A stretch of DNA of 64,000 nucleotides, taken from the IMG/VR virus record IMGVR_UViG_3300020188_000808, positions 124,001 through 188,000 of that record; one strand, written 5' to 3'. The notes below the pieces were generated by a model that saw only the letters and a list, made by a program, of their open reading frames with translations, ran no database searches and was not told the origin of the DNA. Every line of letters begins with the position of its first letter. Position 1 is the first letter of the stretch. The position numbers and the translations under genes are program-made. This document shows, piece by piece, positions 1-62,810 of the stretch.

Positions 1-1
1 A

Positions 2-3500: not shown

Positions 3501-6500
3501 CCTGAAACTCCAACTAAGTTAGGATTATATCCTGCGTACATTCCTGTTAAGTTTGTAGACAACACATATGGTGTTGATCAAAACGTAATTAGAGGACACG
3601 ACGGAAGTATATTTGTAGCTTATGACGACTTTAGAGATGATTTATTACTTGAATTAGAAACAAGAATTTATAATAACTTAAAAGTAAAATACGATCCAAC
3701 ATTATTTGATATACATGACTTTGTTGGAGGATCATTTAGAGATACTTCTATTCCTAAATGGGCTCTTGATAAAGGAATGATTGCAGAATTTATTGATTGG
3801 TTGTCAGTTATAGGTAATGTAGATTACACAGATTATTCTTTTTATGAACCAACTAATACTTTTACATACAACTATAGTGCAACAAATAATGGTGCCGGAA
3901 CAAAGAACTTAGGATACTGGAGAGCAGTTTACAAACAAGCGTTTGACACAGACCGCCCGCATACACATCCTTGGGAAATGTTAGGATATAGTGTAAAACC
4001 AACTTGGTGGGAAACACAATACGGTGCGGCTCCTTATACTAGCGAAAACATATTGTTATGGCAAGACCTTGAAGATGGAATTGCAAGAGAGCCAGGAGCT
4101 CCAGCAAAGTATTTGAAAAAATATAAAAGACCTAATCTTACAAAATGGATACCAGTTGATGATGCAGGACAACTACTAAGCCCGGTTGATTCTAACTATG
4201 CCCAAGAATTTGTATTAGGTAATACTAAGAACCCATTTAAATTTGGTGACGAAGGTCCAACAGAGTCAGCTTGGAGGAAAAGTAGCGAATATCCTTTTGC
4301 ATTATTAATTTCCTTAATCTTAAATCAGCCTAGTAAAGTATTAGGGCTTGGATGGGATAGAAGTAGAATCATTAGAGATAGTTCTGGTACTATTGTTTAT
4401 AGTACAACAGGAAAACGTTTAAGATTAGAAGATTTAGTATTTCCTAATACTACTAATGACGAAACCCGAGTAAACACATGTGGACTAGTAAACTTAATTG
4501 CAAACTATTTGAATAGTAAAGACATCAATGTGTATTCCAATTATCAAGCAAATGTAAAAGCTATTGACAATAAATTAGGAATTAAAATTGGCGGCTTCAC
4601 TGAGAAAAGTAAATTTAAATTAATACTTGATTCAAGAACACCGTACAATGAAGGTAATGTTTTTGTACCAGAAGAAAATTATCAAATTTTCTTAAACACA
4701 AGTTCTGTTACTGAGCTTGTATCGTATAGTGGTGTAATTATTGAAAAGAAACCTGAAGGGTTTGTTCTTAGAGGATACGATAAAGTTAATCCATACTTTA
4801 AATGGTTTACGCCAACTCCAAAAGCAGACGATCCTGTTGTTACAGTAGGTGGAATAAGTGAAGACTTTGTAATATGGTCTGAAAACCAACGATATACTGA
4901 CGGAGCAATAATTCAGTTTAATAATGAATTTTATGTTGCCAAAGGTGATCATATAACAGATACAACATTTGAGCAATCAAATTATCAAAAGCTAGTAACT
5001 CTTCCAGTTAAGGGCGGCCGTAGTGCATTCTTTAGACGTAACTTTAATACTGAATTAATTAGAGAACCAGCTGAACTTGCATACGGTACTATGTATAGAA
5101 CAATCCAAGAAGTAGTTGACTTTTTATTAGGATATGGCAAGTATTTAGAAAGCCGCGGGTTTAGTTTTAATAAGTTTAACGAATCAATTGGAGATGTAGA
5201 AAACTGGAGAGTAAGTGCTAAAGAATTTTTATTCTGGACAACGCAAGGTTGGGCCAATGATAGTGTTATTACTTTAAGTCCTGGCGCAAATGAATTAAAG
5301 TTTTCTAGAGAATATAATGTAGTAGACAATATTTTTGATACATTTTATGATTATAGCTTATTAAAAGCTGATGGTAAAAAATTAATTCCTGAATATGCAA
5401 GAGTTGCTAGAGATAAAGATAACGAGTTTACTTTACAAACTAGAAATACTGCTGATGGAATCTATAATGTTAGTATTCCGCTAGTACAAAAAGAGCATGT
5501 AGTGATACTTGATAATACAACAGTATTTAAAGATGTAATTTATGATCAAGCACCTGGCTATCGACAAGCAAGATTAAAAGTTATGGGATATCGAACTGAT
5601 GCCTGGACAGGCGGATTTAATATTCCAGGATTTATTTATGATAGTGCTAAGACTACAGTTTGGGAACCATGGACAGATTATGCTGTTGCTGATACTGTCA
5701 AGTATAAAGAATTCTATTATGTTGCAAAGGTAAAAATCCCAGGAACTAATGTGTTTAATAATACTGAATGGGAAAAATTAGAAGTACGTCCTGAAGCAGG
5801 ATTAAAAGCAAACTTGGATTATAAAGCAAAACAGTTTGGTGATTTTTATGATCTTGATACAGATAATTTTGATAGTGAACAACAGAAATTAGCACAACAC
5901 TTAATTGGATATCAAAAGCGTAAGTATTTAGAAAATATTATTAATGACGATGTTAGTCAATATAAGTTTTATCAAGGCTTTATTCAAGATAAAGGTACAA
6001 AAAATAGCTTAACTAAATTGTTTGATGCATTGTCTAATACAGATGCAGATAGCTTAGACTTTTATGAAGAATGGGCATTTAGATTAGGCCAGTATGGGTC
6101 GTCAACAGCGTTTGACGAAGTTGAATTTACTTTAGATGAATCACAATTTAGATTAAGTCCTCAACCAGTTGAATTAGTAGATACAATTTCAGGTAACGAA
6201 ACTGATCTAATTTATAGAATTCGACCATTTGAAACTTATTTAAAACCATTAGGCTATAATCATAAACCGTTTCCAACTAACGACATTCAACAAAACTTAT
6301 TACCAACAGCAGGTTATGTTAACCCTGAAGATGTAACATTGTCTATAGCAACCTATGACGATTTATTAACACAGTCAATAACTGCACTTAATGTTGGAGA
6401 TTATGTTTGGATTGGAAAAAGAGGAATTGAATGGGACGTTTTAAAATATATTAGAACTAATGACAGAGTTTTAGCTGTCCAAACATCATCAGTAACTGGA

Positions 6501-9500
6501 GTAGAAGAATTAGTCTTAACACTTAGTAGGCAGTCAAAATACACAGTTGACGAAATTGTCGGTGTAGTTGATGTTGCTGGAGCAGAAAAATTCTATAGAG
6601 TCAAACGTAACGAACTTGATACTTTAATTTGTTATCCAAACGGCGAAACTGAAGATGCTGAACTTGTTAATGGTTTTGTTACTAAGTTTAATTCTAATAG
6701 AACAGCTGGGTTTGATACTGCAAATTTATTACTATCAGACTATAACAATGATTTAAAAGTTGGCGAAACTATTTGGATTGATAAAGATATTGACAATAAC
6801 TGGCTAGTATTAAAAAATGATCCAGTGCATGTACAACAACAAACAATATCAAATGTTAAAACTAGTGATTCAAGTGTAGAGTTTGGAAAAGTAATTGCCG
6901 CTGACAGTAGAAATACAACACTTGCAATAGCAACACCAGGAAATAATGAAGTATACTTATTTGGCAGAACTACAGATACAGTTGACTTCAATCATTTACA
7001 AACTATTGAAGCTCCTGGATCGCTTTATTATGCCGGCAACGGTAACTTTGGTAAGTCAGTCGCTATATCCGAAGATGGTGAATTTTTAATAATTGGAGCA
7101 CCTCAAGCAAGTAATGTTAAAACATTATACAAAGGTCCGTTTTCAAATAGTGAAAATTATACAGCAGGCGACATTGTGTCCTACCAACAAGGAATATGGA
7201 AGGCAAACTACGATATTTCTGCGGCATCAGGCGCATTTAGTTTTAACAGTTATTATGCATCACATGATGTTGCAGTACCAACTTTTAAAGACGGAGCATA
7301 TCCAGAGACTGTATATGCAATCCGCGGCCGCTATAGCTTTGACGGTGCAACAGATCATATTTTAGTTAGAGCACCACTTAATCAATATACAGGATCATTG
7401 GCAGGCGATAAAATTAGTTTACAATGGAATCAATATTCTCAAAATTATCCAACTGGCATTTTACCATTTGGCGTTAACGGACCAGGTGTTGCAAGTTTTG
7501 AAGGACTCAAACCTATTGCATCTAAAATTGACGCAATTCTGTTTGTTGAAAATATATTAAGAATACCAGCAGTAGGAGACATTGTGTCAACTGATACTGC
7601 TATTGGTACAGTACAAGATATTATTATAAGCAATGTTAGTTCAGCAATGCTTTATATGACTGATGTTAATGGTGAGTTTGAGTCATCAGGAACCTTAATA
7701 ACAAATAGTGTTAGTATGGGAACATATGAAGCTGTTGAATTTACTAATCCTAGTTCGGCATTTGGCGGCTGGTGGAGAATTGACGGCATTTCTAGTTTTA
7801 CAACTACAGAAAAAGAAATTACAATTCCAAATATCGTTATTGGTGATATTGTACTAGCATCAGAAAGTCGTTCAGCAGAGATTACAGCAAATACAATGGA
7901 TGATGTTTATGCATTTAACCAAGATTTAGGAAATCCAACTAGAGGCGGAAAAATAGGAATACTAAGCCATTACGATAAACTTGGACTTCCTGTTACAGAG
8001 CCGTATTGGTTTATTAGATCTCCTAAAACTATTACAGATGGACTTAATGTAGCTGACACATTCCAAATGTCCATAAATCAAATTAAAGATAGTTTGAACA
8101 CAATTTATGATCCGTCAGTATTAGGACTATCGGTTAATTATTTAAATCAACCACACGTTGTTTATGATTTATGGGACGGATACATTGATATTACGTTTAC
8201 TAATTTTACACCTCCTCCGGTGCAAGTACCATACGTGCCTGTTGAAGGAGATATAGTAACAGAACCGTTTACTGGTGCTTATGCAGAAGTAGTGTATGTA
8301 CAAGAATCATTACTTGGTGCAAGAGTATTTGTTAAAAATTTAACAGGCACATTTAGTTACGGCAATCTACATGGTGCTACGGGTGATTTATATATTAGTA
8401 ACTGGCAAGGACAAGGGTTCAACAGATTAACAGGAAGAATGGAATCAACTGATTTAACAACCAGTTATTCAGGAAAGTATATTATTGTTAGAAATAACGA
8501 CAGTACATTACTACAAGTACAAAGTCCGTCATTTAAAAATGAAATTGAGTTCCAGTTTTATAAACAACAAACAATACTTGGCGCATCTCGTCCTGCAAAT
8601 ATTCCATCTCCGCTTAACAAAGAATATACACAAATACTTAATATACCAATTGATCCAGCAGACGGAATTGCAAGTTCATACAGCAATGAAGGAGCATACT
8701 TTGTTTATAATAAAACAGGTAGCGGAGAGTATAGCTTACAACGTGGATATACAAATTTACTAAGAGGCGATAATAAAAACTTAGGTACACAACTTGAAGT
8801 AACTAAACACAATAATTTATATACATTATTTGTAAGTGCTCCAGGTGACGGAACAGGTTCAAATCCAGGAAGAATACATTTTATTAAAAACGGATCTGAC
8901 GAACTTGGTGAATATGAATGGCAAGTTACACGTGATCCTTTATATAAAGGAGTATTTAGTGATGCTTCTCCATATTACACTAATGACATTGTACTTTATA
9001 ATAATCAGTTTTATCAAAGCATAACTAATCAAGTTGCATCAGCATTTTCAGCAAGTTGGAAATTACTTCCATTGCACACAGATTTCTTAGGACATGTTCC
9101 AAACACTAGCGGCTATCAACCAGATGGTGACAGTACGTTTGATAATGACGGTGGCACATTGTATAACTTTGCACATCCGTTTACAGTAAGTAAAAATGGT
9201 AGAGTATTAGCAACTGTTGCAGACTTTGAAAATGCAAGTCCTAAAATTGCAATTTATAGATTTGAAAACGGACATTTCGAATACACTCAAGTTATTAACA
9301 CTCCGGTAACATCTACAAAATATGCTTCAGCAATTTCGCTATCCGACGACGGCGAGTTACTAGCAGTTGGTGCACCACTTGATGATAGTGTATCAAATGA
9401 TAACGGAAAGGTTTATCTATATAAAAATAATGAAGGAATCTTTGAAGAATTCCAGTCGTTATTCAGCCCTGATAGTTCAGTAGCAGAACGCTTTGGCCAA

Positions 9501-12500
9501 ACAGTTGACTTTTCAGGTAATGAACTAATGGTATCATCACAAGGTGGTAATTTAGTTGACAATACTTCGTTTGATAGATATGAAGTTCCAATGGAACCGC
9601 AACCACAAACATACTTAGATGATAGTACACTAGTTACAGCACAATATGTTAATAATAAAGAATCGGATCTAGCATCTGAAACTACATTTGATAACAACTT
9701 AACACAGTTTAGTAAAGAAAACTTAGATTCAGGAGAAGTATTTGTTTATCAATATATTGGCGGATACTTATTATATGCAGAAAAATTAACATTTAACAAC
9801 AGTAATGTTGAACGCTTTGGAGAATTTATCCATGCGTCATCTAACCACATTTATGTGTCAATGCCAGAACTAAGTTCATCAAACACAGGTAATAACTTTA
9901 TTGGTACAGTGGTTGATTACAAACGTCAACGTAATGAACTTCCATGGTCGGGATATAGAAATCCAACTAAACAAGTTAATTTAAGTAAATTTAAAGGTGT
10001 GTTTATTTACAACAAAGACGGTAGTGGCACTTCAACTCAACTAGATTATATTGATGCAATCCAAGGAAAAATTGCTGGACCAGCTGAAGAAGAACTAGCA
10101 TTTACAACACCGTTTGATCCTGCAACTTATACTACAAGTGATCAAACAACTGTAAACGTAGATACAGAAAACTATTGGGCCGATGAACACGTAGGAAAAC
10201 TATGGTGGGATATTAGTACAGTACAATGGATAGAGCCATATCAAAGTAATATCATTTATAACACAGCTAACTTTAATAAATTAATGGTAGGTGCTAGTGT
10301 AGATGTTTACGAATGGGTTGAATCTACTTTAACTCCAACACAATGGTTGGCACTTGCAGATACTGAAGAAGGCCTATCAAGAGGTATAAGTGGAACTCCT
10401 AAATACGGAACAAACACTTTTGTAACTAAAAGATTGTTTAATAATGCAAGTTCTAAGTTTTATAATAGATACTACTATTGGGTTAAGAATACTAAAATTA
10501 TTCCAAACTTAGAAAACAGAAAATCAAGTGCATACGATGTAGCACAGTTGATTGAAGATCCAGCGGCACAGGGTTATAAGTTTGTTGCAATTTATGGTAA
10601 TAACAGATTTGGATTGTATAACTGTACTGGGTTAGTCGAAGAAGATAAAAAAGCAATTAACTTTAGATACTGGACAATTAAAAACCAAGATATTAATTCA
10701 CACAATCAATATCAAATTATAAGTGACGGATTACCAACTAGTAAACCTAAAAAAGACTTAGAACAGAAATGGGTTGATAGTTTAGTTGGTGTTGATGTTT
10801 ATAATAGACCAGTTCCGGATCCAGCATTAGCGTTTAAACAAAAATATGGAATTTTAAATAGACCTAGACAGTCTATGTTTAAAAATAATATTGAAGCTCT
10901 AAAACAAGTAATTGAACGCACTAACAGAGTATTAGCTGAACAATTAATTGTTGACGAATATAACTTTGACCAACTACTTTCAAAAGACCCAGCTCCGGAT
11001 CTTATTAGTTCTAAGTACGATGTAGAAATTGACACTTATTCAGAAATTAGTTTTGTTAATATTTCAAAAGTTAAACCAGCAACATTAACTCCAATCTTTG
11101 AAGAAGGAAAATTAATTAGAGTTGATATTACAAATCCAGGATCAGGATATATTACTGTTCCTACTTACGAGTTTGAACAAGTTGGCGATGGCGTAGATGC
11201 ACAAGTTATTTTAACACTTAATAATAGTGGGGGAATTGCTAGTGTAACAGTTAGAAATCCTGGCAAAAACTATTCTACTAATACAAACTTAGCAGTAAGA
11301 TTGTTTAGTGTACTTGTTAAGAGTGACGAGAATGTAGGCAATAAATGGTCAATCTTTGAGTATAATACTGCCAGCGAACAATATCAAAGAACTTCTACTC
11401 AATCATACGATGTAAGTGCTTGGTGGGATTACATTGACTGGTATGCATCAGGATACAGTAAGTTTACAGAAGTTGATTACATAATTGAACAAAGTTACTT
11501 ACTAACTTCATTAGATGACACACTTGGTGATATTGTAAAAATTAAAAACATTGGTGCAGGCGGATGGTTACTACTAGAAAAAATTAGTAATGAAGAAGCA
11601 AGTGACTATACAAGTAACTATAGAACAATTGGTAGAGAAAACGGAACTATTAAGTTTAAAGAGTCGTTATATAACTTTGCAATTAGTTATGTTGGATTTG
11701 ATGGATTAAGTTACGATACTAGTTTTTATGATAACCAACCAACTAGAGAATTACGTATTATCTTAAAAGCACTTAGAGACGATATTTTTGTTGATGCTTT
11801 AGAAGTAGAATACAATCAGTTATTCCTTGCAAGTATTAGATATGCATTTGCAGAACAGCCATTTGTTGACTGGGCATTTAAAACTAGCTTCATTAAAGCA
11901 AAACACAATGCTGGTGAATTACAACAAAAAGTTACATTCCAAAATGATAGCTTACCAAGTTATGAAGATTTTGTTAAAGAAACTAAACCTTTTAAAACAA
12001 AAATTAGAGAATATTTAAGTAACTACACTAAAACAGATTCAACCTCAAGTAGTATTAGTGACTTTGACTTTGCTCCACAGTATAATGAAGATACACAGAA
12101 AATTGAACCAGCTTCTGTTAAAGTTAAAGATAATTTAATTTACGGACAAGATGTATTATTAGATTCTTATCCAAACAAACATTGGGTAGACAATGTTGGC
12201 TTTGAAGTTACTAGTTGTAGTATTAGTGATAAAGGATTAGGTTACACAGAAATTCCTATTATTAAATTTGTTGGCGGCGGCGGCACTGGTGCTAAAGCAC
12301 TTGCTAAACTAGGATCAGGCGGAAGTATTGTAAACATTGAAGTTACAAATCCTGGAAGCGGGTATTTGTCAGCACCTGATATAGAAATTGAAGGTAGTTT
12401 ATCAACTGTTAACGAAAGCAGAATTGCTAAAGCATCAGCACAACTAGGTAATAGTAAAATTAGAGCTATGCACTTGCGTAGCAAGTTTGACCGTGTATCA

Positions 12501-15383: not shown

Positions 15384-15386
15384 ATA
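15380..15386 (+). promoter_or_regulatory. T4-late-like promoter ATAAATA
   Basis: ATAAATA (T4 late consensus TATAAATA) just upstream of the AGGA RBS of 15405; motif recurs before other structural genes. Confidence 0.55.
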
Positions 15387-15404
15387 CACTTGTAGGAAAT
15401 AATA

Positions 15405-16019: not shown

Positions 16020-16022
16020 TAA

Positions 16023-19864: not shown

Positions 19865-19867
19865 GAG

Positions 19868-19874: not shown

Positions 19875-19893
19875 GTAACATAGAGGAAAAGAA

Positions 19894-47343: not shown

Positions 47344-47382
47344 AAGTATATTTAACAGATAGTTTAATGATATAGTAGAGTT

Positions 47383-48081: not shown

Positions 48082-48082
48082 C

Positions 48083-51874: not shown

Positions 51875-51892
51875 CAGTAACAGGAGATAATA

Positions 51893-53140: not shown

Positions 53141-53145
53141 TTGTT

Positions 53146-53862: not shown

Positions 53863-53870
53863 ACACTAGT

Positions 53871-55792: not shown

Positions 55793-56450
55793 TTTTCCAA
55801 GTTTTACCATTAGCTATATTCATCCTGTGTGAAAATGTTTTAGTATTCATGTCAAATATATCGCCTGTACTTTTACCATTAATAATACAATGGGCTAACT
55901 TAGATGTAGCAGTAATTGGATTAAACATCACATGTGTTCTTTTTTCATCTATAGTGTTAAAATCAAAACTAGGTGAATCGTATCCAATCATTACCGGCGG
56001 AGCATACTCTGTCATGCCGTACCAATTAGCAACAGTCTGTACTCCACGCTCTTTGAATGCATCAATAAATGATTGCTCAATTTTACTACTACCAGTAACC
56101 ATATAACGTACACAACTCATGTCTAAGTCTTTAAAGCCTTTTGTCTTTTGTAACAACTCTAAATGGCGTGGAATTAACGCTATATACGTCGGTTTAACGC
56201 TACTAAACAACGTAGGGTAGGTAAGTGCATTAAAGTTAGCACTAACTAGCTGTGCGCCGCTTATATAAGCAGGAAGAGCTGTTATAGTATAGTGTGCTAT
56301 AGTGTTTGCTGGAAAGACATCCAATACAATATCGTCTTTAGTTAGTCCAATTTCTTTTGCTGAAAGTTTTGCAGATTGGTTAATATATTCCCAAGAGTGT
56401 GTTACACGTTTTGGTTCATCTGTACTACCTGATGTGAATAGAGTAAGCAT
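55782..56450 (-). CDS. Minimal AMP-binding (ANL adenylation) enzyme
   Basis: A3 P-loop FTSGSTDEPK, A5 YGMTE, A7 TGD; only 222 aa. Confidence 0.75.
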   Translation of the reverse strand: MLTLFTSGSTDEPKRVTHSWEYINQSAKLSAKEIGLTKDDIVLDVFPANTIAHYTITALPAYISGAQLVSANFNALTYPTLFSSVKPTYIALIPRHLELLQKTKGFKDLDMSCVRYMVTGSSKIEQSFIDAFKERGVQTVANWYGMTEYAPPVMIGYDSPSFDFNTIDEKRTHVMFNPITATSKLAHCIINGKSTGDIFDMNTKTFSHRMNIANGKTWKNEF

Positions 56451-56494
56451 ATACTTACTTATTTGAAAACTATTTTGGAATTATTGGATGTGAA

Positions 56495-57868
56495 TTAAGC
56501 AATCATTTTGATCCAAGCCGCGCCATCGTAAAATACTGGATAAGCGTTTCCTGAACCAACCCCAACTGGATCCCAAGTAGTTCTGTCAGCGACAGCAATC
56601 ATACCTAGTGTTGGAGTGTTAGGTTCTGCTGACGAAGCCGCCAATTTTGCAAAACCGTTAATGTCTAATGTAGCCAATGGTGTAAATGCAAGAGTGTTGT
56701 TAATAGCAACCCAACCATTTGACATGATTGACATTGTTTTTAACTCTGGACTACTTGCAGAACCATTGTTGTTAATAATTCTAATTGAACCTTTTGCTAT
56801 ATCGTTTGATACTGTAGTGTTAGGATCAATTTGGAATGCAATTACACTTGATGGAACTAATGTATCAGTAGTAGCATCATAACTTCTAGCGTCAATAGCA
56901 CCTAGGTAATCACCAGCAGTACCTTGTACCGGAGTTACTATATCGCCATGACGACCAGTAAATGCCATTTTAGAAATACCACCAAAACTGCTCTGTGCTA
57001 AACTGACCATGTCAATTGGCGGTGAACCGTCTACGTTAGTAATTTCTAAACCAGTACTATATACATCTGTTACGTCACCAATCTTAATTGTTTCTGCGTT
57101 TCTAACTCTTAGTACTTTACCTTGTGCATAAATTGAACCGTTATCAATAACAACTGTGTTGTTAACACCATCAACTAGTACGCCACTATCATCAGCAAAA
57201 ACTGAACCTGTTACGTCACCTGCAAGTGTTCCACTAAAAGTTGGAGCAGTTACAGTAGCTGAAAAGATAGCTGAACTTGCCGCAATTGATTTAAGTGCTG
57301 GATTGTAAAATGTTGTTGCATCGTTGGCTTTGACTGTACCTGTTAATTCGCCTGTTACATTAACTGCACCTGTTGCAACATTAAGTAATACTGTACTGTC
57401 GTTACCAATTACATTTGCATTAATAGAAAGTGCATCAATTTGGTCTGTTACATTAAGAGTGTTAAGGTGTGCTGTTGCAAACTTGTTACTAGATGAACCT
57501 AAACTTCTAGCACCGTCAACATCTGGAATAATATCTGATTCGATTTTAGCTGATAAATTAACTGTATCAGTATTAGAATCACCAATTTGTAAATTACCAC
57601 CTAACGTTAAATTTCCGTCAGCAGTGATATTACCGGTTGCAGTAATGTTTCCTGTTACGTTTACATTACCTGTACCTGTTAAATTGTAGTTATTTAGGTC
57701 TAAGTCTGCACCAAGGAACGTACCAGCTGTGTCAACTGCTAACCCGCCTGCGGTAGTTCCATCTCCTACATACAGCTTTTTAGTGTCTGTAGTATAGATC
57801 AACTCTCCGTCTAACGGAGTAATTAAAGCCCTCTGGGCATCTGTTCCTCTTCGTAATCTTAAAGCCAT
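56495..57868 (-). CDS. Tail fibre protein with Mtd_N/hyaluronidase-like N-terminus
   Basis: MALRLRRGT...GELIYTTDTKKLYVGDG N-terminus; G-N-x-T beta-helical repeats; AGGAG RBS. Confidence 0.75.
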   Translation of the reverse strand: MALRLRRGTDAQRALITPLDGELIYTTDTKKLYVGDGTTAGGLAVDTAGTFLGADLDLNNYNLTGTGNVNVTGNITATGNITADGNLTLGGNLQIGDSNTDTVNLSAKIESDIIPDVDGARSLGSSSNKFATAHLNTLNVTDQIDALSINANVIGNDSTVLLNVATGAVNVTGELTGTVKANDATTFYNPALKSIAASSAIFSATVTAPTFSGTLAGDVTGSVFADDSGVLVDGVNNTVVIDNGSIYAQGKVLRVRNAETIKIGDVTDVYSTGLEITNVDGSPPIDMVSLAQSSFGGISKMAFTGRHGDIVTPVQGTAGDYLGAIDARSYDATTDTLVPSSVIAFQIDPNTTVSNDIAKGSIRIINNNGSASSPELKTMSIMSNGWVAINNTLAFTPLATLDINGFAKLAASSAEPNTPTLGMIAVADRTTWDPVGVGSGNAYPVFYDGAAWIKMIA

Positions 57869-57896
57869 TTATAGCACTCCTAGTATCTTATACATG

Positions 57897-57903
57897 TATT
57901 TAT
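57897..57903 (-). promoter_or_regulatory. T4-late-like promoter ATAAATA
   Basis: CATAAATA on the minus strand upstream of the fibre gene RBS. Confidence 0.55.
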
Positions 57904-57918
57904 GCCAATACCTAAAAT

Positions 57919-58239
57919 TTACTTCTGCTTTTTTAAGAACTGTTTAGTACGCTTTTGTACATCAGTCTTAACACGTTCCGAATCTACACGGAAATCGACA
58001 TTTTTAATAGCAGTATTGTAGTTAGTAAACATCTCGTTAAGTGCATTTTCGACCTCTTTAAGGGGGTCTAATTTTGACTTATCTTTAATTTCAATCTCCC
58101 ACTTCTTACCGTTGTGGAAAAATACTGTTATACTTTCTACATATTCCAAAGGTATGGCATCGATATCAATGTCCTTAAATACCTCAGGCCATTTAGCTAT
58201 TATATCTTGTGGTAATCGTTTTTTCTTACGATTTGCCAC
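57919..58239 (-). CDS. Hypothetical phage protein
   Basis: 106-aa ORF overlapping the stop of the upstream gene. Confidence 0.6.
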   Translation of the reverse strand: MANRKKKRLPQDIIAKWPEVFKDIDIDAIPLEYVESITVFFHNGKKWEIEIKDKSKLDPLKEVENALNEMFTNYNTAIKNVDFRVDSERVKTDVQKRTKQFLKKQK

Positions 58240-58819
58240 GACCAGCCGCCTTCTTTGCTGGTGCTAGTTCGTCTGCTTGTTTACGTAGGTCTGTAGCTTC
58301 TTTAAACAGTCTATCGGCATCTGCTCTTAGATTTTTAGCTAGGTCAGCGTCCGAAAGTGGAGCATCTCCTGGTGCTACTGTTGGCGCTGTAGGCTCTGCA
58401 ATTTTTGACGCACTAGCAACTTCTGTAACTGAACTTCCACCTACTGCTAGGTCTGAAATACTAACACCTTTTTGCTCTGCAATAATTTTATTTAATTCTG
58501 CTAGATTAATGTTAGTTGAGTTATCAGGAGTCATAGTAATGTCTTTAGTTGCGATTTTTGTCAACTTACCTTTACTATGAAAAGCTGGTAACATAGTGCT
58601 ACCATCTTGTAGTTGTGTTCTTTGCATAGCATCAGCTAATTCTTCAGCTACTTGACCTGTATTACTTTCAATAAGATTCATTAAGACATCGTGGTCTTGA
58701 TCTTTTAAGTTTTCTGTTTGTACTACTAAACAATGTTCTGCATCGTTTGGTAATGTTCTGAATGCAACAGCAACTTTACGTCCTGTCTTTTCAATTCTTC
58801 CAATGTGTTTTAACGCCAT
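58226..58819 (-). CDS. Hypothetical phage protein (C-terminal coiled coil)
   Basis: 197 aa, AGGAG RBS. Confidence 0.65.
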   Translation of the reverse strand: MALKHIGRIEKTGRKVAVAFRTLPNDAEHCLVVQTENLKDQDHDVLMNLIESNTGQVAEELADAMQRTQLQDGSTMLPAFHSKGKLTKIATKDITMTPDNSTNINLAELNKIIAEQKGVSISDLAVGGSSVTEVASASKIAEPTAPTVAPGDAPLSDADLAKNLRADADRLFKEATDLRKQADELAPAKKAAGRGKS

Positions 58820-58830
58820 ATTATTTCTCC

Positions 58831-59184
58831 TTAGGCTCCTAATACTGCACTTGCATCAGCTGGTGATACTGGTGTATCTTTTGCTGGTGTTGCAGGCATA
58901 GTAGGTGCATTAGCCGATTCGGCTACTTGTTGATTTTGTACCGTTGTTAGGAATACATCTAATTTATTAAATGTTTTTCCAACTGCTTCTAGTTCGTTAG
59001 CTTTAAATGCTCCACGACTTTGTGCAACTTCGATAATAGTTTTTAAAACGCCTAGGTCCTGTACAGTTAATTCTGCCGCGGCCTGAGCTCCTGTTGGTGC
59101 ACCACCCTGTGGCATAGGTGCTTGGCCTGCGCCATCTTTTCCTACTGTAGGGGTTGATGCAACTTTTGTTGTATCATTTGACAT
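58831..59184 (-). CDS. Hypothetical phage protein (helical core with disordered A/P/T-rich ends)
   Basis: 117 aa, AGGAG RBS; GTAAATA late-like motif at 59238-59244. Confidence 0.65.
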   Translation of the reverse strand: MSNDTTKVASTPTVGKDGAGQAPMPQGGAPTGAQAAAELTVQDLGVLKTIIEVAQSRGAFKANELEAVGKTFNKLDVFLTTVQNQQVAESANAPTMPATPAKDTPVSPADASAVLGA

Positions 59185-59254
59185 TTATATTCTCCTTGTT
59201 TTGATCATAACAAGCATATTAATCTATATGCTATTATTATTTACTTGTTGATAC

Positions 59255-59545
59255 TTAGTTGTACTTTAAATGTGGACAAGCCAACATGAAATAACTTAAC
59301 TCTCGATGTTGTTCAAATCCAATTCTTATACACCGATTATATGCACTATCTGGATTATCAGATAGCACTATAGTTTTTCCAATATAAAATCGGCCTTTTA
59401 GATTGGTCTTAATCCATTTACGGATTGAATCTTCCATATTATATTTTGGTGTTAGATTACAAAACTCAAAATGCTTTGGTGCTGATTTTGTTTCTCGAAC
59501 ATCAAAAAAGTCTAAGGCGTTGGGTGTATTTTTCTTATCCAGCAC
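59255..59545 (-). CDS. Hypothetical phage protein
   Basis: 96 aa, GTG start coupled to the upstream stop. Confidence 0.55.
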   Translation of the reverse strand: MLDKKNTPNALDFFDVRETKSAPKHFEFCNLTPKYNMEDSIRKWIKTNLKGRFYIGKTIVLSDNPDSAYNRCIRIGFEQHRELSYFMLACPHLKYN

Positions 59546-60813
59546 TATTTTCCTTTTTCGTAATGTGCAGTAACACCAAATGGCGCCTGCATATTCTTAT
59601 CATGATAGCTATGTACAATAAAGATAGTATCACAATAATCTTCATCACCCCAGCTATCCCAAGGATAACCATCAGTGAACATAATGAACTTCTTAGGAAC
59701 AATATCATTTTCTTTCATGTATTCCCAGTTAGCATTAAAGTCAGTACCGCCGCCACCAATAACTTTATATTCACGTAAGTTACTAGGCGAATCTGCACTA
59801 AAGTCTTCTTCACCATATACGGCTGTATCAAAGCACCATAGTTTAATTTTATAGTCTTGATACTCATCCATAATACCTTGTACTTCGCTTAAGAAGTCAG
59901 TTGCTTGATCGTCACCAATTGAACCTGACATGTCAATAGCAATACAAAGATCAACAGTATCTTGGAAGTTCATACCTGGAAGTATTGCACCAGTATGCCA
60001 ACCTTTACGTGAAGGACGAGCAAAAGTAAAATCATTACGGATAGTACTTTCAATCTGTTGTCTAAGTAACTCTCTCCAAGACATTTTAGGCTCAGTAAGA
60101 TCCTTAATCATACGTTCTACTTCTTTAGGAACATTACCAGCACCTGCCGCCTGTGCCGCAGACATCATGTTCTCTTTAATTTCATCACGTATTTTAGCAA
60201 GTTCTTCTTTTGAATAACTAGGCTTATTGCTTTTACTTTTACCTTTACCTGTTTTAGGTTGTCCTGGGGTATTACCTTTCTCCCAATCAACGTGTTCGTC
60301 AAGTAACTTACCTAATTGATCTAATTCTTCTTGATCATACTTTTCAAAGATGTCATCATATACAGCCTCTGAAGACCAACCATCATATTTAAAGTCTTGG
60401 AAAATTGGAATGTCTTTAGGCTTATCTCCAATACGATCACGTACTAGTGTATTGTTTACAATATAGTCTGCCGCAATATTATGTATTTGCGGATCTCTAT
60501 CTTCTCTACGTGTCATGTGATCAAATACACAATGAAGTATTTCATGTGCAATTACAAATTCTATTTCTTTATTAGACATCTTAGCAAAGAACGGAACACT
60601 ATAAAATAGGTGTCTACCATCTGTGGCCGCAGTTGGACACCAATCACTTGCTTCTTTAATAATAAGCCTTGTAGCCATATTACCAAAAAATGGGTGACGT
60701 AGTAACAAGCCAACTCTAGCTACAATAATTCTGTCCAAAACTTCTGCACGAAGTTCGTCAGTTATTTCTATTTCTGGAGTTTCTGTTTCTAGTTCTAATA
60801 CGTCTGTTGCCAT
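59545..60813 (-). CDS. Metallopeptidase-like plus vWA domain protein (DUF2201-type), partner of the AAA ATPase
   Basis: PTAATDG, HEILH zinc motif, vWA MIDAS DMSGS, GGGTDF, FTDG. Confidence 0.85.
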   Translation of the reverse strand: MATDVLELETETPEIEITDELRAEVLDRIIVARVGLLLRHPFFGNMATRLIIKEASDWCPTAATDGRHLFYSVPFFAKMSNKEIEFVIAHEILHCVFDHMTRREDRDPQIHNIAADYIVNNTLVRDRIGDKPKDIPIFQDFKYDGWSSEAVYDDIFEKYDQEELDQLGKLLDEHVDWEKGNTPGQPKTGKGKSKSNKPSYSKEELAKIRDEIKENMMSAAQAAGAGNVPKEVERMIKDLTEPKMSWRELLRQQIESTIRNDFTFARPSRKGWHTGAILPGMNFQDTVDLCIAIDMSGSIGDDQATDFLSEVQGIMDEYQDYKIKLWCFDTAVYGEEDFSADSPSNLREYKVIGGGGTDFNANWEYMKENDIVPKKFIMFTDGYPWDSWGDEDYCDTIFIVHSYHDKNMQAPFGVTAHYEKGK

Positions 60814-60841
60814 GTGCCTATTCCTTATTGTTTATACTTAC

Positions 60842-60870
60842 AGTATACACTATTTAATTGAGTTTGTCAA
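60842..60870 (-). promoter_or_regulatory. Sigma70-like early promoter TTGACA-N17-TATACT
   Basis: -35 at 60870-60865 and -10 at 60847-60842 with 17-nt spacer, upstream of 60813. Confidence 0.75.
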
Positions 60871-60872
60871 CC

Positions 60873-60911
60873 AAATAAAAAGGGTAGAATACCAAAAGAT
60901 ATCCTACCCTT
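60873..60911 (-). terminator. Rho-independent terminator after the AAA ATPase gene
   Basis: Minus-strand stem AAGGGTAGGATA / TATTCTACCCTT (12 bp, one G-U), 8-nt loop, then a U-rich tail. Confidence 0.75.
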
Positions 60912-60916
60912 ATCAG

Positions 60917-62002
60917 TTAACTAGCCTGTGCGGCAGTAATGTACTTACCGTACTTTTCATGGAACTCATCAAAACACTCAACTTCATCTGGATCGATTGG
61001 AAGTTGATATTGTGTTAGACCTAATTTGATACCCATAACTACTAGCTCAGTATCAAAATTGTCCATTGAGAACCTTAAGAAATTATTGACCATTTCGTCA
61101 AACTTCTTATTGCCTTTGTCGTTAGCTTCTTTAAGTTCGTAACATAAAGATACAGTCAAGGAATACATGGCACTGATTTCTCGTGTATCTAATGTTTTTA
61201 CTTTACCTGCGAGTACGTCACTCGGGTTAGGTAACTTAGATGAAACTTTACGATGGGCCATGAACTTTACTGCCAGGCCTTCGCCAACTGAACCACTAAC
61301 TAAATCAGTAGTGGTTGTCTCGTCATCATCATCCTCTAGTAGTTCGGATACAAATGACCAAGAACGAGGTGTAGCAAACGAACGACTTGGACTTTTTGGA
61401 TCAAAGTCATACAAGTCCTTCTTGCTAAATGTTAAGTAACCAACAACATCTTGGTGGATATCATTGTTTACTGCCCACTGGAACCAATCGTCAAAATCAA
61501 CTTTAAGTTCTAAGTGAACAAATCTATTTGCTAACGGTGCTGGCATTCTGTATGTAACACCCTTATCAGCATCTCTGTTACCAGCCGCTACAATAAGAAC
61601 GTTATCAGGTAGTACATAAGTACCAACCTTACGGTTAAGAATTAATTGATAAGCCGCCGCCTGTACAGCCGGTGCCGCAGAGTTCATTTCGTCTAAGAAC
61701 AATACAATAAATTTATGTTTCTTAGCAAACTCTTGAGTTGGCAATTCTTGTGGCGGTGCCCATTGCATTGTATTATCGTTTGAACTATAATACGGAATGC
61801 CTTTAATGTCTGTTGGATCCCATAGTGACAAACGAATGTCAATCATGTGTGCATCAATCTCTGACGCAACCTGTCCAACGATGTCCGATTTACCAATACC
61901 TGGTGCTCCCCAGATAAACAAAGGACGTTTCTTTTTAAATGCTCTAACAATGCTCTTCTTTGCATTATTAGGACTTACTGTTCTAATTGCAATGTTTTCC
62001 AT
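60917..62002 (-). CDS. MoxR-like AAA+ ATPase
   Basis: Walker A GAPGIGKS, Walker B LFLDEMN, AAGNR, LANRF, TPRSW; ATG at 62002 has a GAGGA RBS (track 62068). Confidence 0.85.
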   Translation of the reverse strand: MENIAIRTVSPNNAKKSIVRAFKKKRPLFIWGAPGIGKSDIVGQVASEIDAHMIDIRLSLWDPTDIKGIPYYSSNDNTMQWAPPQELPTQEFAKKHKFIVLFLDEMNSAAPAVQAAAYQLILNRKVGTYVLPDNVLIVAAGNRDADKGVTYRMPAPLANRFVHLELKVDFDDWFQWAVNNDIHQDVVGYLTFSKKDLYDFDPKSPSRSFATPRSWSFVSELLEDDDDETTTTDLVSGSVGEGLAVKFMAHRKVSSKLPNPSDVLAGKVKTLDTREISAMYSLTVSLCYELKEANDKGNKKFDEMVNNFLRFSMDNFDTELVVMGIKLGLTQYQLPIDPDEVECFDEFHEKYGKYITAAQAS

Positions 62003-62058
62003 TTTGTATTCCTCTTTCTGTTTGTTCAGTGCCATACTTAATTTCTTAGTATGTATAT

Positions 62059-62087
62059 ATAATAGCACCTCTTTATCAAAAGGTCAA
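62059..62087 (-). promoter_or_regulatory. Sigma70-like early promoter TTGACC-N17-TATTAT with extended -10 TG
   Basis: -35 at 62087-62082 and -10 at 62064-62059 with 17-nt spacer, in the intergenic gap. Confidence 0.7.
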
Positions 62088-62128
62088 CCAGAAAACGCAG
62101 TTTTTTTAAGAAAAAATATGTAGTAATA

Positions 62129-62518
62129 TCAAGGGGTTAGTTCTTCATCTGTCCGTTTTAGGGCTTTAGCTAGTCCATATTTACGGACATCTCCACTAAA
62201 CAGATGTAATTCCATGCTCTTTTTTTCACTTGTAACTGTAATATGCTTGTTAGTTACATAGTATGGACAATCAATAAACTTATCTAAGAACAGTATAATT
62301 TGGGTAGTTATTTTAAATTCGGGAGGAAATGGTATTTCGTAAGTAACTAATTCTAATTGGTCTGTAATAAACATCATGCCTTCGTCAGTTAGACGTAACC
62401 CGCCAACTGCTCTAGTGTTTTGCCACCATAAAGGCATATATTCTTTTAACGTACTATCATTAATACTAATGTTGGCTTGTTTTAAGAACACCTTGGTATA
62501 GGTTTCTTTCCAGTTCAT
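62129..62518 (-). CDS. Hypothetical phage protein
   Basis: 129-aa ORF in a tightly packed minus-strand run. Confidence 0.6.
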   Translation of the reverse strand: MNWKETYTKVFLKQANISINDSTLKEYMPLWWQNTRAVGGLRLTDEGMMFITDQLELVTYEIPFPPEFKITTQIILFLDKFIDCPYYVTNKHITVTSEKKSMELHLFSGDVRKYGLAKALKRTDEELTP

Positions 62519-62519
62519 T

Positions 62520-62810
62520 CTATTCTTCTTCTACTACTGGTCCGGTAGTTAACTTTACAACAGTAAACTCTTTAGTTGTAAATAATTCGTTTAATTTACT
62601 TGCTAAGTTGTGTGCATGACCAGGATTACTGAAACTAACTTTTTTATATTTAGGCCCAGGATAATTAGTTAATGAATTTAAACTTTTTAAGTTAAAAGGA
62701 TTACCTTGATAGAATACTGCCCAAATAGCCTCAGCGGCTAGAATCTGCTCGCTTCTATAAGACTTTTTGTCTGTATATTCTAATAAAATATTTGGTTTTG
62801 GTCTACTCAT
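62520..62810 (-). CDS. Hypothetical phage protein
   Basis: 96 aa, GGGAG RBS, ATAAATA at 62830-62836. Confidence 0.65.
   Translation of the reverse strand: MSRPKPNILLEYTDKKSYRSEQILAAEAIWAVFYQGNPFNLKSLNSLTNYPGPKYKKVSFSNPGHAHNLASKLNELFTTKEFTVVKLTTGPVVEEE

What the first reader, a model, noticed from the sequence alone, without database searches (positions are those of the whole stretch)
4026..62740. Apparent genome-wide purge of GCWGC: Ala-Ala is always encoded GCG/GCC-GCN
Ala is normally GCA/GCT in this AT-rich genome. Yet in all of the more than 30 Ala-Ala pairs I checked by eye, on both strands and in all three modules, the first codon is GCG or GCC. Examples: 4026 GCGGCT, 6897 GCCGCT, 7221 GCGGCA, 18674 GCGGCGGCA, 48989 GCGGCCGCA, and minus-strand SAAPAVQAAAY near 61650-61680. 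I noticed no GCAGC/GCTGC, although base composition alone predicts a few dozen in 64 kb. GATC, GANTC, CCWGG, GGWCC and GGCC are common. Inference: strong long-term selection by a host GCWGC-specific restriction or defence system (TseI/ApeKI-like specificity). This offers a host-prediction handle, shows the enzyme island is long-resident, and argues the DNA is not shielded by hypermodification.
Basis: seen in the sequence. Interest (0 to 1): 0.7.

Follow-up and report, generated by a model that had tools for sequence, protein, structure and literature searches.

The report
Jumbo phage purged of GCWGC sites
An uncultivated marine jumbo phage and a whole branch of its relatives have removed every copy of the 5-base sequence GCWGC by silent recoding, which is an extreme but classic case of a virus escaping a host restriction enzyme, and it has even reduced the number of Ala-Ala pairs in the phage's proteins.

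Summary
The 64-kb window has 0 GCWGC (37-56 expected). The whole 267.8-kb contig also has 0, against 308±9 in a codon-preserving shuffle. All 331 Ala-Ala pairs use GCG or GCC first, although GCA/GCT make up 91% of Ala codons elsewhere. In the other two frames the site is also avoided synonymously (TGT, non-AGC Ser, CAA, non-CTG Leu). This rules out a W-to-S read artefact, and independent Illumina DNA and RNA assemblies agree.

The genome is an uncultivated jumbo myovirus from salt-marsh and marine water. Among 80 TerL relatives, one branch of 43 is fully or nearly purged, while the sister branch is mostly normal (a complete 357.6-kb relative has 770/863). A 335-kb Red Sea genome inside the normal branch is depleted independently (35/413). 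Synonymous sites have diverged widely within the purged branch, so selection has been sustained. Ala-Ala dipeptides are also 22-30% rarer in the depleted genomes.

Best explanation (about 0.78): a host restriction system specific for GCWGC (TseI/ApeKI type, or equivalently BbvI type). The host is unknown. The host-prediction handle currently works only by exclusion. The claim that the enzyme island is long-resident is not supported. This is a new member of a known kind.

The parts
1..64000 (.). Whole window free of GCWGC (GCAGC/GCTGC) on both strands. It is part of a 267,783-bp contig that is also free of it.
   Evidence: 0 observed against 37-56 expected in the window and 175-308 in the genome.
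4026..4031 (+). Ala-Ala encoded GCG-GCT in the giant ORF 570-15383 (example of recoding)
   Evidence: sequence and frame verified.
6897..6902 (+). Ala-Ala encoded GCC-GCT in the giant ORF
7221..7226 (+). Ala-Ala encoded GCG-GCA in the giant ORF
18674..18682 (+). Ala-Ala-Ala encoded GCG-GCG-GCA in ORF 18053-19864
48989..48997 (+). Ala-Ala-Ala encoded GCG-GCC-GCA in ORF 48083-49552 (inside the island)
61649..61681 (-). Peptide SAAPAVQAAAY in the AAA/MoxR-like gene, with Ala-Ala as GCG-GCA and Ala-Ala-Ala as GCG-GCG-GCT
570..27186 (+). Conserved structural block (giant 4937-aa ORF, tail-collar protein and others). It is shared with purged and normal relatives at 38-92% identity and has 0 GCWGC.
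   Evidence: expected 13.4±1.8 for window 1-22000.
28341..56450 (.). Lineage-specific enzyme island (radical SAM/SPASM proteins, Trp-halogenase family enzyme, many unknowns). It has almost no homologues in relatives and is still fully purged.
   Evidence: the codon-shuffle expectation, computed over window 22000-56000 (which also takes in conserved genes at 22-28 kb), is 12.6±2.4 against 0 observed.
56495..63584 (-). Block on the minus strand (Mtd_N protein, DUF2201/VWA plus AAA pair); most genes from 57.9 kb on have homologues at 40-77% in G006c57 and G001, and the Mtd_N protein at 27-45%. It has 0 GCWGC.
   Evidence: expected 13.1±1.6.

Best explanation
The phage lineage has been under sustained selection to remove every GCWGC from its DNA, because its host population carries a defence that cuts unmodified GCWGC. 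The most likely agent is a Type II restriction-modification system with TseI/ApeKI-like (palindromic) or, equivalently, BbvI-like (GCAGC on either strand) specificity. A genome of 270-360 kb would otherwise carry about 300-400 targets, and a single one is enough for cleavage. Each site lost therefore raises the chance of a productive infection, and selection pushes the count to zero. Shown here: the purge is achieved almost wholly by synonymous codon choice. GCA/GCT becomes GCG/GCC before another Ala, TGC becomes TGT and AGC becomes other Ser codons after NGC, and CAG becomes CAA and CTG becomes other Leu codons between G and C. Some Ala-Ala dipeptides have also been lost. The purge is inherited across a deep branch, has arisen again independently, and is absent in sister lineages. 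Inferred and not shown: that the agent is a host restriction enzyme, which type it is, and which host carries it.
For: (1) Complete absence: 0 vs 308±9 in the codon-preserving shuffle. Pooled purged-lineage DNA of 568 kb has 0 vs 706, while pooled normal relatives of 758 kb have 1765 vs 1854. (2) Frame-aware synonymous recoding: Ala-Ala 331/331 GCS, Cys after NGC 25/25 TGT, Ser after NGC 0/86 AGC, Gln in G_C context 62/62 CAA, Leu 0/128 CTG. (3) Orthologous positions: at conserved TerL Ala-Ala codons the normal relatives carry GCWGC and all 40 purged rows carry GCC/GCG with the same residues. Across 163 orthologues with the complete normal genome G001, conserved Ala-Ala starts with GCS 58/58 in G000 and with GCW 50/58 in G001. 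(4) Phylogeny: one branch of 43 rows (SH-aLRT 97) is 37 zero plus 6 partial, and the sister branch is 32 normal with scattered zero or partial rows. The 335-kb Red Sea genome (35/413) lies inside the normal branch, so its depletion is convergent. (5) Sustained selection: four-fold-site identity within the purged branch is down to 0.49-0.64, with saturation at about 0.38. (6) The sequence is real: the phage is present in at least 11 DNA and 9 RNA Illumina runs, and independent contigs differ by 0-4 SNVs, none of which creates a site. G004 is the same phage from another sample and has 0/207. (7) Other classic Type II sites are also depleted in a lineage-specific way (GCGC, CASTG, GCTAGC, GCATGC, TGCGCA, AAGCTT), and they can be separated from GCWGC in the Red Sea genome, as expected from several R-M systems. 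(8) No self-protection was found: no DNA methyltransferase or hypermodification marker in G000-G005. (9) The two independently depleted genomes share a tail-fibre/chaperone block and a lysin that the normal relative lacks, which fits a shared host group. (10) GCWGC-specific enzymes and methyltransferases exist in nature, including in uncultured aquatic bacteria (PMC3643589, PMC8557920, PMC6329791, PMC8919816). Site avoidance is an established phage strategy (PMC6286503).
Against: No host and no cognate enzyme were identified. The MAG bins that hold related contigs are taxonomically scattered, and the Marinimicrobia-labelled bin has normal GCWGC in its cellular contigs. The contig is about 75% complete, so a methyltransferase or nuclease in the missing part is possible. 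However, the complete normal relative G001 also lacks one. The tree root is unresolved, so it is unclear whether the purge is ancestral or derived in the clade. Partly depleted lineages (for example 35/413) are hard to reconcile with an always-lethal enzyme and imply that selection fluctuates or depends on frequency.
Confidence: 0.78

Rival explanations
1. Avoidance of being marked. Part of the host population carries an orphan GCWGC methyltransferase, and other hosts carry a modification-dependent (Type IV or BisI-like) nuclease. Phage DNA without GCWGC is never methylated at that motif and so escapes. This is still a host defence, but the cutting enzyme recognises methylated sites and not unmodified ones.
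For: The GCWGC m4C methyltransferase M.AbaBS3I in uncultured freshwater Chloroflexi is listed without a partner restriction gene, and a marine Chloroflexi MAG is also GCWGC-methylated. BisI-family enzymes cut methylated GCNGC (titles and abstracts). Partly depleted lineages fit a weaker pressure that depends on the population.
Against: It needs two host components instead of one. BisI-type enzymes accept GCNGC, yet GCSGC is enriched 1.5-1.6-fold in the purged genomes. That would be risky if a GCNGC methyltransferase were around. Nothing here gives direct evidence.
Confidence: 0.09
2. The phage itself encodes a GCWGC-specific nuclease, used to degrade host DNA or to exclude competitors, and it keeps its own genome free of the target.
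For: Many ORFs have no annotation. The purge is complete, as self-immunity would demand. No DNA methyltransferase that could provide self-protection was found.
Against: None of the 40 proteins scanned with Pfam, which cover 38 of the 80 G000 genes that lack a G001 homologue and 21 of the 25 shared with the depleted Red Sea genome but absent from G001 (two others having been scanned earlier), is a recognisable nuclease. Depletion arose independently in several lineages and occurs in graded, partial states. That fits varying outside pressure better than a gene that is either present or absent. Pfam misses many restriction enzymes, so this reading is not excluded.
Confidence: 0.06
3. The absence is not biological selection on a target. 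It is either a sequencing or base-calling artefact at a modified motif, or a mutational bias such as deamination of methylated cytosine.
For: GCSGC is in excess by about the number of missing GCWGC (426 vs 107), which at first sight looks like W read as S.
Against: The excess lies in the Ala-Ala frame only. In the third frame a W-to-S artefact would create G-CGG-C and G-CCG-C (Arg, Pro), but these are at expectation (1 vs 0.8; 4 vs 3.9), while Gln is CAA 62/62. The data are Illumina, from more than 20 runs including RNA, with concordant independent assemblies. Close relatives in the same collections have normal counts. The deamination products GTWGC are not specially enriched (1.08 vs 0.99), and a mutational bias cannot give 0 of 700.
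Confidence: 0.01
4. GCWGC is reserved as a functional signal of the phage itself (packaging, replication or transcription) and is therefore excluded everywhere else.
For: None specific.
Against: A reserved signal should occur at least once. There are zero copies in 267.8 kb, in the independent assembly G004, and in G005 and G007. Sister lineages with the same core machinery carry hundreds of copies.
Confidence: 0.02

Closest known systems
Restriction-site (palindrome) avoidance in phage genomes, as surveyed by Rusinov et al. 2018 (PMC6286503). The classic cases are recalled from memory and were not checked here: Sharp 1986, and Staphylococcus phage K, which lacks GATC.
   Same: A short Type II recognition sequence is strongly under-represented compared with composition-based and Markov expectations. 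It is removed without changing proteins, is specific to certain lineages, and is accompanied by weaker avoidance of other Type II sites.
   Different: Scale and documentation. A 5-bp site is eliminated completely from a jumbo genome of at least 268 kb (about 300 expected) and from 568 kb of pooled clade DNA (706 expected). The purge is held across a branch with near-saturated synonymous divergence, has arisen convergently inside the same clade, and has a measurable effect on dipeptide content. The host and the enzyme are unknown.
TseI / ApeKI (Type IIP, G^CWGC) and BbvI-type (Type IIS, GCAGC 8/12) restriction systems (PMC3643589, PMC8557920; BbvI from memory)
   Same: The avoided word is exactly their recognition sequence. 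GCSGC is not avoided, so the central W is part of the specificity.
   Different: The known enzymes come from thermophiles or Bacillus-group bacteria. No such system has been tied to a marine host of this phage. The motif alone cannot distinguish the palindromic type from the asymmetric type.
Roseobacter phage CRP-810 (OR671924, temperate, host CHUG strain FZCC0198; PMC11288001)
   Same: It has 1 GCWGC against 119 expected, which is its most depleted word. It also lacks AAGCTT, GTGCAC and CTGCAG, and it carries a GH108 lysin 58% identical to the query's.
   Different: It is an unrelated 57.7-kb siphovirus-type genome with 53% GC. It also avoids CCWGG and GGWCC, which the query does not. A second CHUG phage, CRP-804, has normal GCWGC.
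Jumbo myoviruses Atu_ph07 / Phosso (Agrobacterium, Sinorhizobium) and the PA5oct group (Pseudomonas)
   Same: These are the closest cultured relatives by tail sheath (42-49% identity) and TerL (50-55%). They have similar genome sizes and T4-like structural cores.
   Different: They are only distant relatives. No close cultured relative exists. Their GCWGC content was not examined.

Membership tests
Restriction-site avoidance by a phage | The site is significantly under-represented against composition, Markov and codon-preserving null models | tested here: met
   0 vs 175 / 298.5 / 307.8±9.1 in the genome; the top outlier among all 5-mers.
Restriction-site avoidance by a phage | Removal by synonymous choice with the protein sequence kept, in all frames, on both strands and in non-coding DNA | tested here: met
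   The non-coding 18.7 kb also has 0 sites, against about 12 expected by scaling the composition estimate to the length (inference).
Restriction-site avoidance by a phage | Lineage-specific: close relatives with other hosts keep the site | tested here: met
   G001 770/863 and G002 242/250 against G000, G004, G005 and G007, which all have 0.
Restriction-site avoidance by a phage | The host carries a cognate restriction system for the avoided site | not testable with these tools
   The host is unknown. MAG bins are uninformative, there is no psbA, and atlas clusters are viral only.
Target of a TseI/ApeKI- or BbvI-type enzyme | The avoided word equals GCWGC, with the central W required | tested here: met
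   GCWGC is 0, while GCSGC is enriched 1.5-1.6-fold. Outer-position neighbours are not depleted.
Target of a TseI/ApeKI- or BbvI-type enzyme | Virion DNA is cleavable only if sites are introduced, and the host enzyme cuts GCWGC | not testable with these tools
   This needs wet-lab work.
Self-protection by a phage DNA methyltransferase or by base hypermodification | The genome encodes a C5, N4/N6 or Dam-type methyltransferase, a ThyA-like hydroxymethylase, or DpdA/TGT | tested here: not met
   None in G000 and none in relatives G001-G005. ThyX is present. G001's ThyA is canonical. Caveat: G000 is about 75% complete.
Sequencing artefact at a modified motif | W-to-S substitutions regardless of reading frame, and dependence on platform or assembly | tested here: not met
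   No excess of G-CGG-C or G-CCG-C. Illumina DNA and RNA assemblies from different runs agree.

The most novel reading that the evidence does not exclude
The cause of the purge lies in the phage and not in the host. The lineage carries an unrecognised GCWGC-specific nuclease among its many unannotated genes. It uses the nuclease to shred host or competitor DNA, and it is immune simply because it has no targets. This would be a modification-free counterpart of T4's strategy.
Probability: 0.06. Interest if true: 0.8.

Novelty: new member of a known kind. Interest (0 to 1): 0.5.

Why it matters
This is one of the cleanest natural demonstrations of how strongly a single restriction specificity can shape a very large viral genome. 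About 300 sites have been erased, and 40% of all GCG/GCC alanine codons in the genome (331 of 828) sit in front of another alanine codon, where GCA or GCT would create the site. Ala-Ala pairs are also 22-30% rarer than in orthologues of an unpurged relative.

Purged, partly purged and normal lineages coexist in one cosmopolitan marine clade. That makes the clade a natural experiment on how fast site avoidance is gained and lost. It also implies that a GCWGC-specific defence is common in some abundant, still unidentified marine host.

In practice, the avoidance profile (GCWGC, with GCGC, CASTG, GCTAGC, GCATGC and AAGCTT also avoided, but not GATC or CCWGG) can be matched against metagenomic methylomes. 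That could link this uncultured jumbo phage to its host.

Tried and rejected
- Megablast of 20 kb against cultured phages found no match.
- Host by MAG binning: the TerL scan of genome contigs gave 7 loci in bins labelled Marinimicrobia, archaea, Legionellales, Crocinitomicaceae and Flavobacteriaceae. The labels are inconsistent. The Marinimicrobia bin's cellular contigs have normal GCWGC (224/227), so I rejected this as a host signal.
- Cyanophage hypothesis, raised by the cyanophage-like accessory genes: no psbA in 5 genomes.
- Atlas look-ups of the lysin and ThyX returned viral clusters only.
- SAR11 or OM43 as host, raised by the 81-82% lysin identity to Mosig and Melnitz: those phages have normal GCWGC and avoid GATC strongly, which G000 does not. 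Not supported.
- Roseobacter as host, raised by CRP-810 with 1/119: five other roseophages are normal for GCWGC and all six avoid CCWGG, which G000 does not. Not supported as it stands.
- A single fuzzy agent recognising GC-W(0-2)-GC, raised by the co-depletion of GCGC and GCWWGC: the Red Sea genome is depleted in GCWGC and GCGC but normal for GCWWGC, so the motifs are separable.
- G001's ThyA-family gene as a possible hydroxymethylase and alternative shield: it is a canonical thymidylate synthase.
- The excess of NGC-GGC pairs as Ser-to-Gly escapes: it is a GGC-GGC Gly-Gly preference that normal G001 shares.
- Residual sites as markers of recent imports: they are not enriched in the accessory genes of the Red Sea genome.
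- Rooting the TerL tree with a 58%-identical outgroup: the branch is too long and the root is unresolved.

Full report
**1. Observation**

The window (64,000 bp, 34% GC) contains no GCAGC and no GCTGC, but 75 GCSGC. GATC, GANTC, CCWGG, GGWCC and GGCC are all common. Expected GCWGC is 55.6 by a maximal-order Markov model and 37.3 by base composition, and it is the most depleted of all 5-mers.

The window is positions 124,001-188,000 of a single 267,783-bp contig (36.4% GC). This is an IMG/VR virus record classed as linear and about 75% complete. The whole contig also has zero GCWGC, against 298.5 (Markov) or 175 (composition), z = -17.3.

I called 253 genes greedily (93% coding) and shuffled synonymous codons within each gene. 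It gives 307.8 ± 9.1 sites (minimum 285 in 200 shuffles) against 0 observed. GCSGC is 426 against 106.8 ± 9.3.

**2. How the sites are avoided**

By reading frame:

| Frame | Context | Shuffle expectation | Observed |
|---|---|---|---|
| 0 | GCW-GCN (Ala-Ala) | 179 GCAGC + 94 GCTGC | 0; instead GCGGC 225 (vs 35) and GCCGC 106 (vs 23.5) |
| 1 | NGC-WGC | about 23 | 0; Cys after NGC is TGT 25/25, Ser after NGC is never AGC (0/86) |
| 2 | NNG-CWG-CNN | about 13 | 0; Gln is CAA 62/62, Leu is never CTG (0/128) |

- All 331 Ala-Ala pairs begin with GCG or GCC. Elsewhere Ala is GCA 3246, GCT 1751, GCC 257, GCG 240. So 40% of all GCG/GCC codons in the genome sit before another Ala codon.
- In frame 2, G-CGG-C (1 vs 0.8) and G-CCG-C (4 vs 3.9) show no excess. 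A process that simply read or turned W into S would have produced Arg and Pro codons there.
- The recoding is therefore synonymous and aware of the reading frame, which means selection and not an artefact.
- An apparent excess of NGC-GGC pairs is a GGC-GGC (Gly-Gly) codon-pair preference. The unpurged relative shares it, so it is unrelated to the purge.

**3. The sequence is real**

A 6-kb stretch is held by at least 11 DNA and 9 metatranscriptome Illumina runs of salt-marsh metagenomes. Independent contigs from two DNA and two RNA runs cover it with 0-4 SNVs at word depths of 24-180. None of those SNVs creates a site. A 186-kb contig from another sample (G004) is 99.93% identical over its whole length and also has 0 sites against 207 expected.

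**4. What the element is**

It is a jumbo myovirus.

- Structural and replication genes include tail sheath, baseplate wedge, portal, TerL, family-B DNA polymerase, a Lon-like protease and SbcC. Within the window there is a tail-collar protein and an Mtd_N protein.
- The nearest cultured relatives are distant. Agrobacterium phage Atu_ph07 and Sinorhizobium phage Phosso have 42% sheath identity. The Pseudomonas PA5oct group has 49% sheath and 53-55% TerL identity.
- It encodes three tRNAs: Arg-TCT, Leu-TAA and Arg-GCG.

**5. Relatives: a natural experiment**

TerL finds more than 599 related viral contigs, and the best 80 (78-100% identity) were fetched with flanks.

- Every locus with TerL at or above 82% identity has 0 GCWGC (6-26 expected each). 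At 78-81% there are zero, partial and normal loci.
- On a TerL tree, one branch of 43 rows (SH-aLRT 97) holds 37 zero and 6 partial loci. Its sister branch of 38 holds 32 normal loci plus scattered zero or partial ones. Well-supported branches force at least 3-4 changes of state.
- Whole contigs:

| Genome | Length | GCWGC obs/exp | State |
|---|---|---|---|
| G005 | 113 kb | 0/131 | purged |
| G007 | 84 kb | 0/100 | purged |
| G008 | 59 kb | 3/55 | partial |
| G001 (complete) | 357.6 kb | 770/863 | normal |
| G002 | 136 kb | 242/250 | normal |

- Pooled, and leaving out near-copies of the query, 568 kb of purged-lineage DNA has 0 against 706 expected. 758 kb of normal relatives has 1765 against 1854.
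- A 335-kb contig binned into a Red Sea MAG has 35 against 413 (O/E 0.08). Its TerL lies inside the mostly normal branch (SH-aLRT 99), so that depletion is independent.
- The root could not be placed because the outgroup branch is too long. I cannot say whether the purge is ancestral or derived.

**6. Orthologous positions**

- In TerL, three conserved Ala-Ala positions carry GCWGC in 12-23 of the 32 normal rows. Of the 40 purged rows, all 40 carry GCC/GCG-GC with unchanged residues at two of these positions and 39 at the third (the remaining row is Ser-Ala). A conserved Met-Gln-Arg is G-CAG-C in normal rows and G-CAA-C in 40/40 purged rows.
- G000 and G001 share 163 reciprocal-best orthologues with a median 53% amino-acid identity. 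At conserved Ala-Ala the first codon is GCS 58/58 in G000 and GCW 50/58 in G001. All 50 frame-0 sites of G001 with conserved residues are GCSGC in G000.
- Within the purged branch, identity at four-fold sites between the query and other members falls to 0.49-0.64, with saturation at about 0.38. Synonymous sites have turned over many times while the site count stayed at zero, so selection has been sustained.

**7. An effect on proteins**

- The Ala-Ala O/E ratio is 0.81 in G000 and 1.22 in G001, at equal Ala content.
- In the TerL neighbourhoods the pooled ratio is 0.98 in purged loci and 1.32 in normal loci (per-locus medians 0.965 and 1.265). Mann-Whitney gives p = 1e-6, not corrected for shared ancestry.
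- Within aligned orthologues, Ala-Ala is the most depleted of 246 dipeptides in G000 against G001 (186 vs 265). It ranks 4th of 267 in the independently depleted Red Sea genome against G001 (255 vs 329). It is not an outlier between the two depleted genomes (rank 42 of 252).
- Where G001 has Ala-Ala and G000 differs, the commonest replacements are Ala-Ser, Ser-Ala, Ala-Gly, Val-Ala and Thr-Ala.
- I read this as a modest amino-acid-level cost of avoiding the site. It rests on two independent contrasts only.

**8. Other avoided words**

- G000 and G001 both avoid GTGCAC, AAGCTT, CTGCAG and GGATCC.
- Depletion specific to the purged lineages:

| Motif | O/E purged | O/E normal |
|---|---|---|
| GCGC | 0.37 | 0.79 |
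| CASTG | 0.52 | 0.98 |
| GCTAGC | 0.08 | 0.64 |
| GCATGC | 0.18 | 0.73 |
| GCAAGC | 0.32 | 0.87 |
| TGCGCA | 0.17 | 0.81 |
| AAGCTT | 0.09 | 0.32 |

- The apparent GC-W(n)-GC gradient is not the work of one agent. The Red Sea genome is depleted for GCWGC and GCGC but normal for GCWWGC, CASTG and AAGCTT.
- This pattern is what several independent R-M specificities in different host populations would produce.

**9. Self-protection and the phage-borne rival**

- No C5, N4/N6 or D12 methyltransferase was found in G000 or in G001-G005. There is no TGT/DpdA. G000 has ThyX, and G001 has a canonical ThyA.
- Of the 80 G000 genes without a G001 homologue, 38 were among the 40 proteins put through these Pfam scans. 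They include 2OG-Fe(II) oxygenases, small-molecule methyltransferases, a redoxin, NT5C, a GH108 lysin, YHYH, MazG and a cupin. None is a recognisable nuclease.
- Twenty-five G000 genes are shared with the depleted Red Sea genome but absent from G001. They include a block of tail-fibre/chaperone-like genes (63.9-75.2 kb of the contig) and the lysin, which is 81% identical against a genome-wide median of 54%. This fits shared host range.
- Deamination products are not enriched.

**10. The host-prediction handle**

- The lysin is 81-82% identical to those of Pelagibacter phage Mosig and OM43 phage Melnitz, 70% to HTVC008M, and 58% to Roseobacter phage CRP-810.
- I counted the motif in ten cultured marine phages:

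| Phage | Host | GCWGC obs/exp |
|---|---|---|
| Mosig | SAR11 | 126/146 |
| HTVC008M | SAR11 | 149/147 |
| Melnitz | OM43 | 162/176 |
| CRP-1 | Roseobacter RCA | 156/134 |
| CRP-3 | Roseobacter RCA | 112/106 |
| CRP-7 | Roseobacter RCA | 155/141 |
| CRP-821 | Roseobacter FZCC0197 | 127/144 |
| CRP-804 | Roseobacter CHUG FZCC0196 | 102/87 |
| CRP-810 | Roseobacter CHUG FZCC0198 (temperate) | 1/119 |

  The tenth, CRP-822, was not fetched. The table therefore lists nine phages, and CRP-810 is the only one of them that avoids the site.
- The SAR11 and OM43 phages avoid GATC almost completely, and all six roseophages avoid CCWGG. G000 avoids neither (GATC 839/773, CCWGG 293/313).
- So the handle is real in principle, because avoidance profiles differ sharply with host. 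However, R-M specificity is patchy at strain level. At present the handle only argues against hosts like those tested.
- GCWGC methylation has been reported in uncultured freshwater and marine Chloroflexi (PMC6329791, PMC8919816). This is a lead and not a match.
- MAG bins that hold related contigs are taxonomically scattered and uninformative. There is no psbA.

**11. The enzyme island**

- Window genes 570-27,186 are conserved across the clade. From 57.9 kb to the end of the window most genes have homologues in G006c57 and G001; the Mtd_N protein (56,495-57,868) is only 27-45% identical.
- The stretch from about 28 to 56 kb has almost no homologues in any sampled relative. It holds several radical SAM/SPASM proteins, a Trp-halogenase family enzyme and many unknowns. 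The halogenase has only 30-36% relatives elsewhere in the clade.
- The island has 0 sites against 12.6 ± 2.4 expected, an expectation computed over window 22,000-56,000. The 90 G000 genes without a G001 orthologue have 0 against 80 ± 5.
- In the incompletely purged Red Sea genome, accessory genes are as depleted as core genes (O/E 0.05-0.06 vs 0.08; p = 0.35).
- Absence of sites therefore does not show long residence. Strong selection, or a donor pool under the same pressure, would give the same picture.

**12. Verdict**

The core inference, sustained selection by a GCWGC-specific host defence, is the best explanation, and I put it at about 0.78. The agent and the host remain inferred. This is an unusually complete, clade-wide and convergent example of a known phenomenon, extended to uncultivated marine jumbo phages, with an added effect at the protein level.

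Noticed in passing
window 570-15383 (+): A single ORF of 4,937 aa lies directly after the baseplate-wedge gene. It is conserved across the clade (66% identity in G005, 42-44% in G006c57, G001 and G002). It is probably a giant tail or baseplate-associated protein. No domain analysis was done.
   Followed up: no
window 25813-55302: An enzyme island with at least four radical SAM proteins, of which two carry a SPASM domain (25813-27186 radical SAM, 27170-28363 SPASM + weak radical SAM, 36110-37435 SPASM + radical SAM, 41435-42556 - radical SAM), plus a Trp-halogenase family flavoenzyme (54142-55302). Most of 28-56 kb has no homologue in any sampled relative. It looks like a peptide or natural-product modification cluster carried by a phage.
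   Followed up: partly
window 56495-57868 (-): A protein with an N-terminal Mtd_N (major tropism determinant) domain, as in the receptor-binding proteins of diversity-generating retroelements. I did not look for a reverse transcriptase or for template and variable repeats.
   Followed up: no
window 17574-17799: Contigs from two runs (X9 DNA, X6 RNA) replace about 224 bp of the tail-collar protein gene with a diverged stretch of the same length. This looks like a population-level variant cassette in a likely receptor-binding protein.
   Followed up: no
window 59545-62068 (-): A DUF2201 metallopeptidase/VWA protein plus a MoxR/AAA ATPase form a CobT/CobS-like pair. It is 70-77% identical in G006c57 and G001; no homologue was found in the fragments G002, G005, G007 or G008.
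   Followed up: no
whole genome G000 and relatives: Ala-Ala dipeptides are 22-30% rarer in the two independently GCWGC-depleted genomes than in orthologues of the normal relative. Ala-Ala ranks 1st of 246 and 4th of 267 dipeptides, so a DNA-level defence pressure is visible in protein composition.
   Followed up: yes
G000, G001, G006c57, Mosig, Melnitz, HTVC008M, CRP-810, CRP-821, CRP-3, CRP-804: GTGCAC (the ApaLI-type site) is nearly absent from almost every marine phage examined, whatever its host (for example 9/59, 2/55, 2/64, 1/15, 0/24, 0/18, 0/12). The cause is unknown. It may be a very widespread specificity or a constraint unrelated to restriction.
   Followed up: partly
L010:1850-2359 (-) (G000 221850-222359): The GH108 + PG_binding_3 lysin is 81-82% identical to those of Pelagibacter phage Mosig and OM43 phage Melnitz, far above the similarity of any core gene to cultured phages. 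This suggests lysin exchange between this jumbo-phage clade and pelagimyophages.
   Followed up: partly
L044:4621-4921: In a partly purged relative, five of its eight GCWGC sites lie within 300 bp. This looks like a recent recombinational import into an otherwise purged background.
   Followed up: no
L112/L113 (PBPT01000016.1, 335 kb; PBPT01000082.1, 153 kb): Two large contigs of a public MAG labelled Candidatus Neomarinimicrobiota (RS350, 2.4 Mb) carry TerL genes of this jumbo-phage clade, each equally similar to the query (76%); the fully fetched 335-kb contig shares 190 of G000's 253 genes, so it is phage DNA. Together they would make about 20% of the bin viral contamination, with the 153-kb contig judged on its TerL alone.
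   Followed up: partly
OR671924.1 (Roseobacter phage CRP-810): This cultured temperate roseophage has 1 GCWGC against 119 expected, and also 0 CCWGG (100 expected) and 0 GGWCC (57 expected). Its host strain FZCC0198 would be a tractable system for finding a marine GCWGC-specific restriction system.
   Followed up: partly
MT647606.1, NC_020484.1, MZ577097.1: The SAR11 and OM43 myophages are almost free of GATC (19/381, 83/405, 23/515). Mosig also has 0 ACGT against 188 expected, and both SAR11 phages avoid CASTG (7/119, 10/158). Melnitz encodes a C5 methyltransferase.
   Followed up: no
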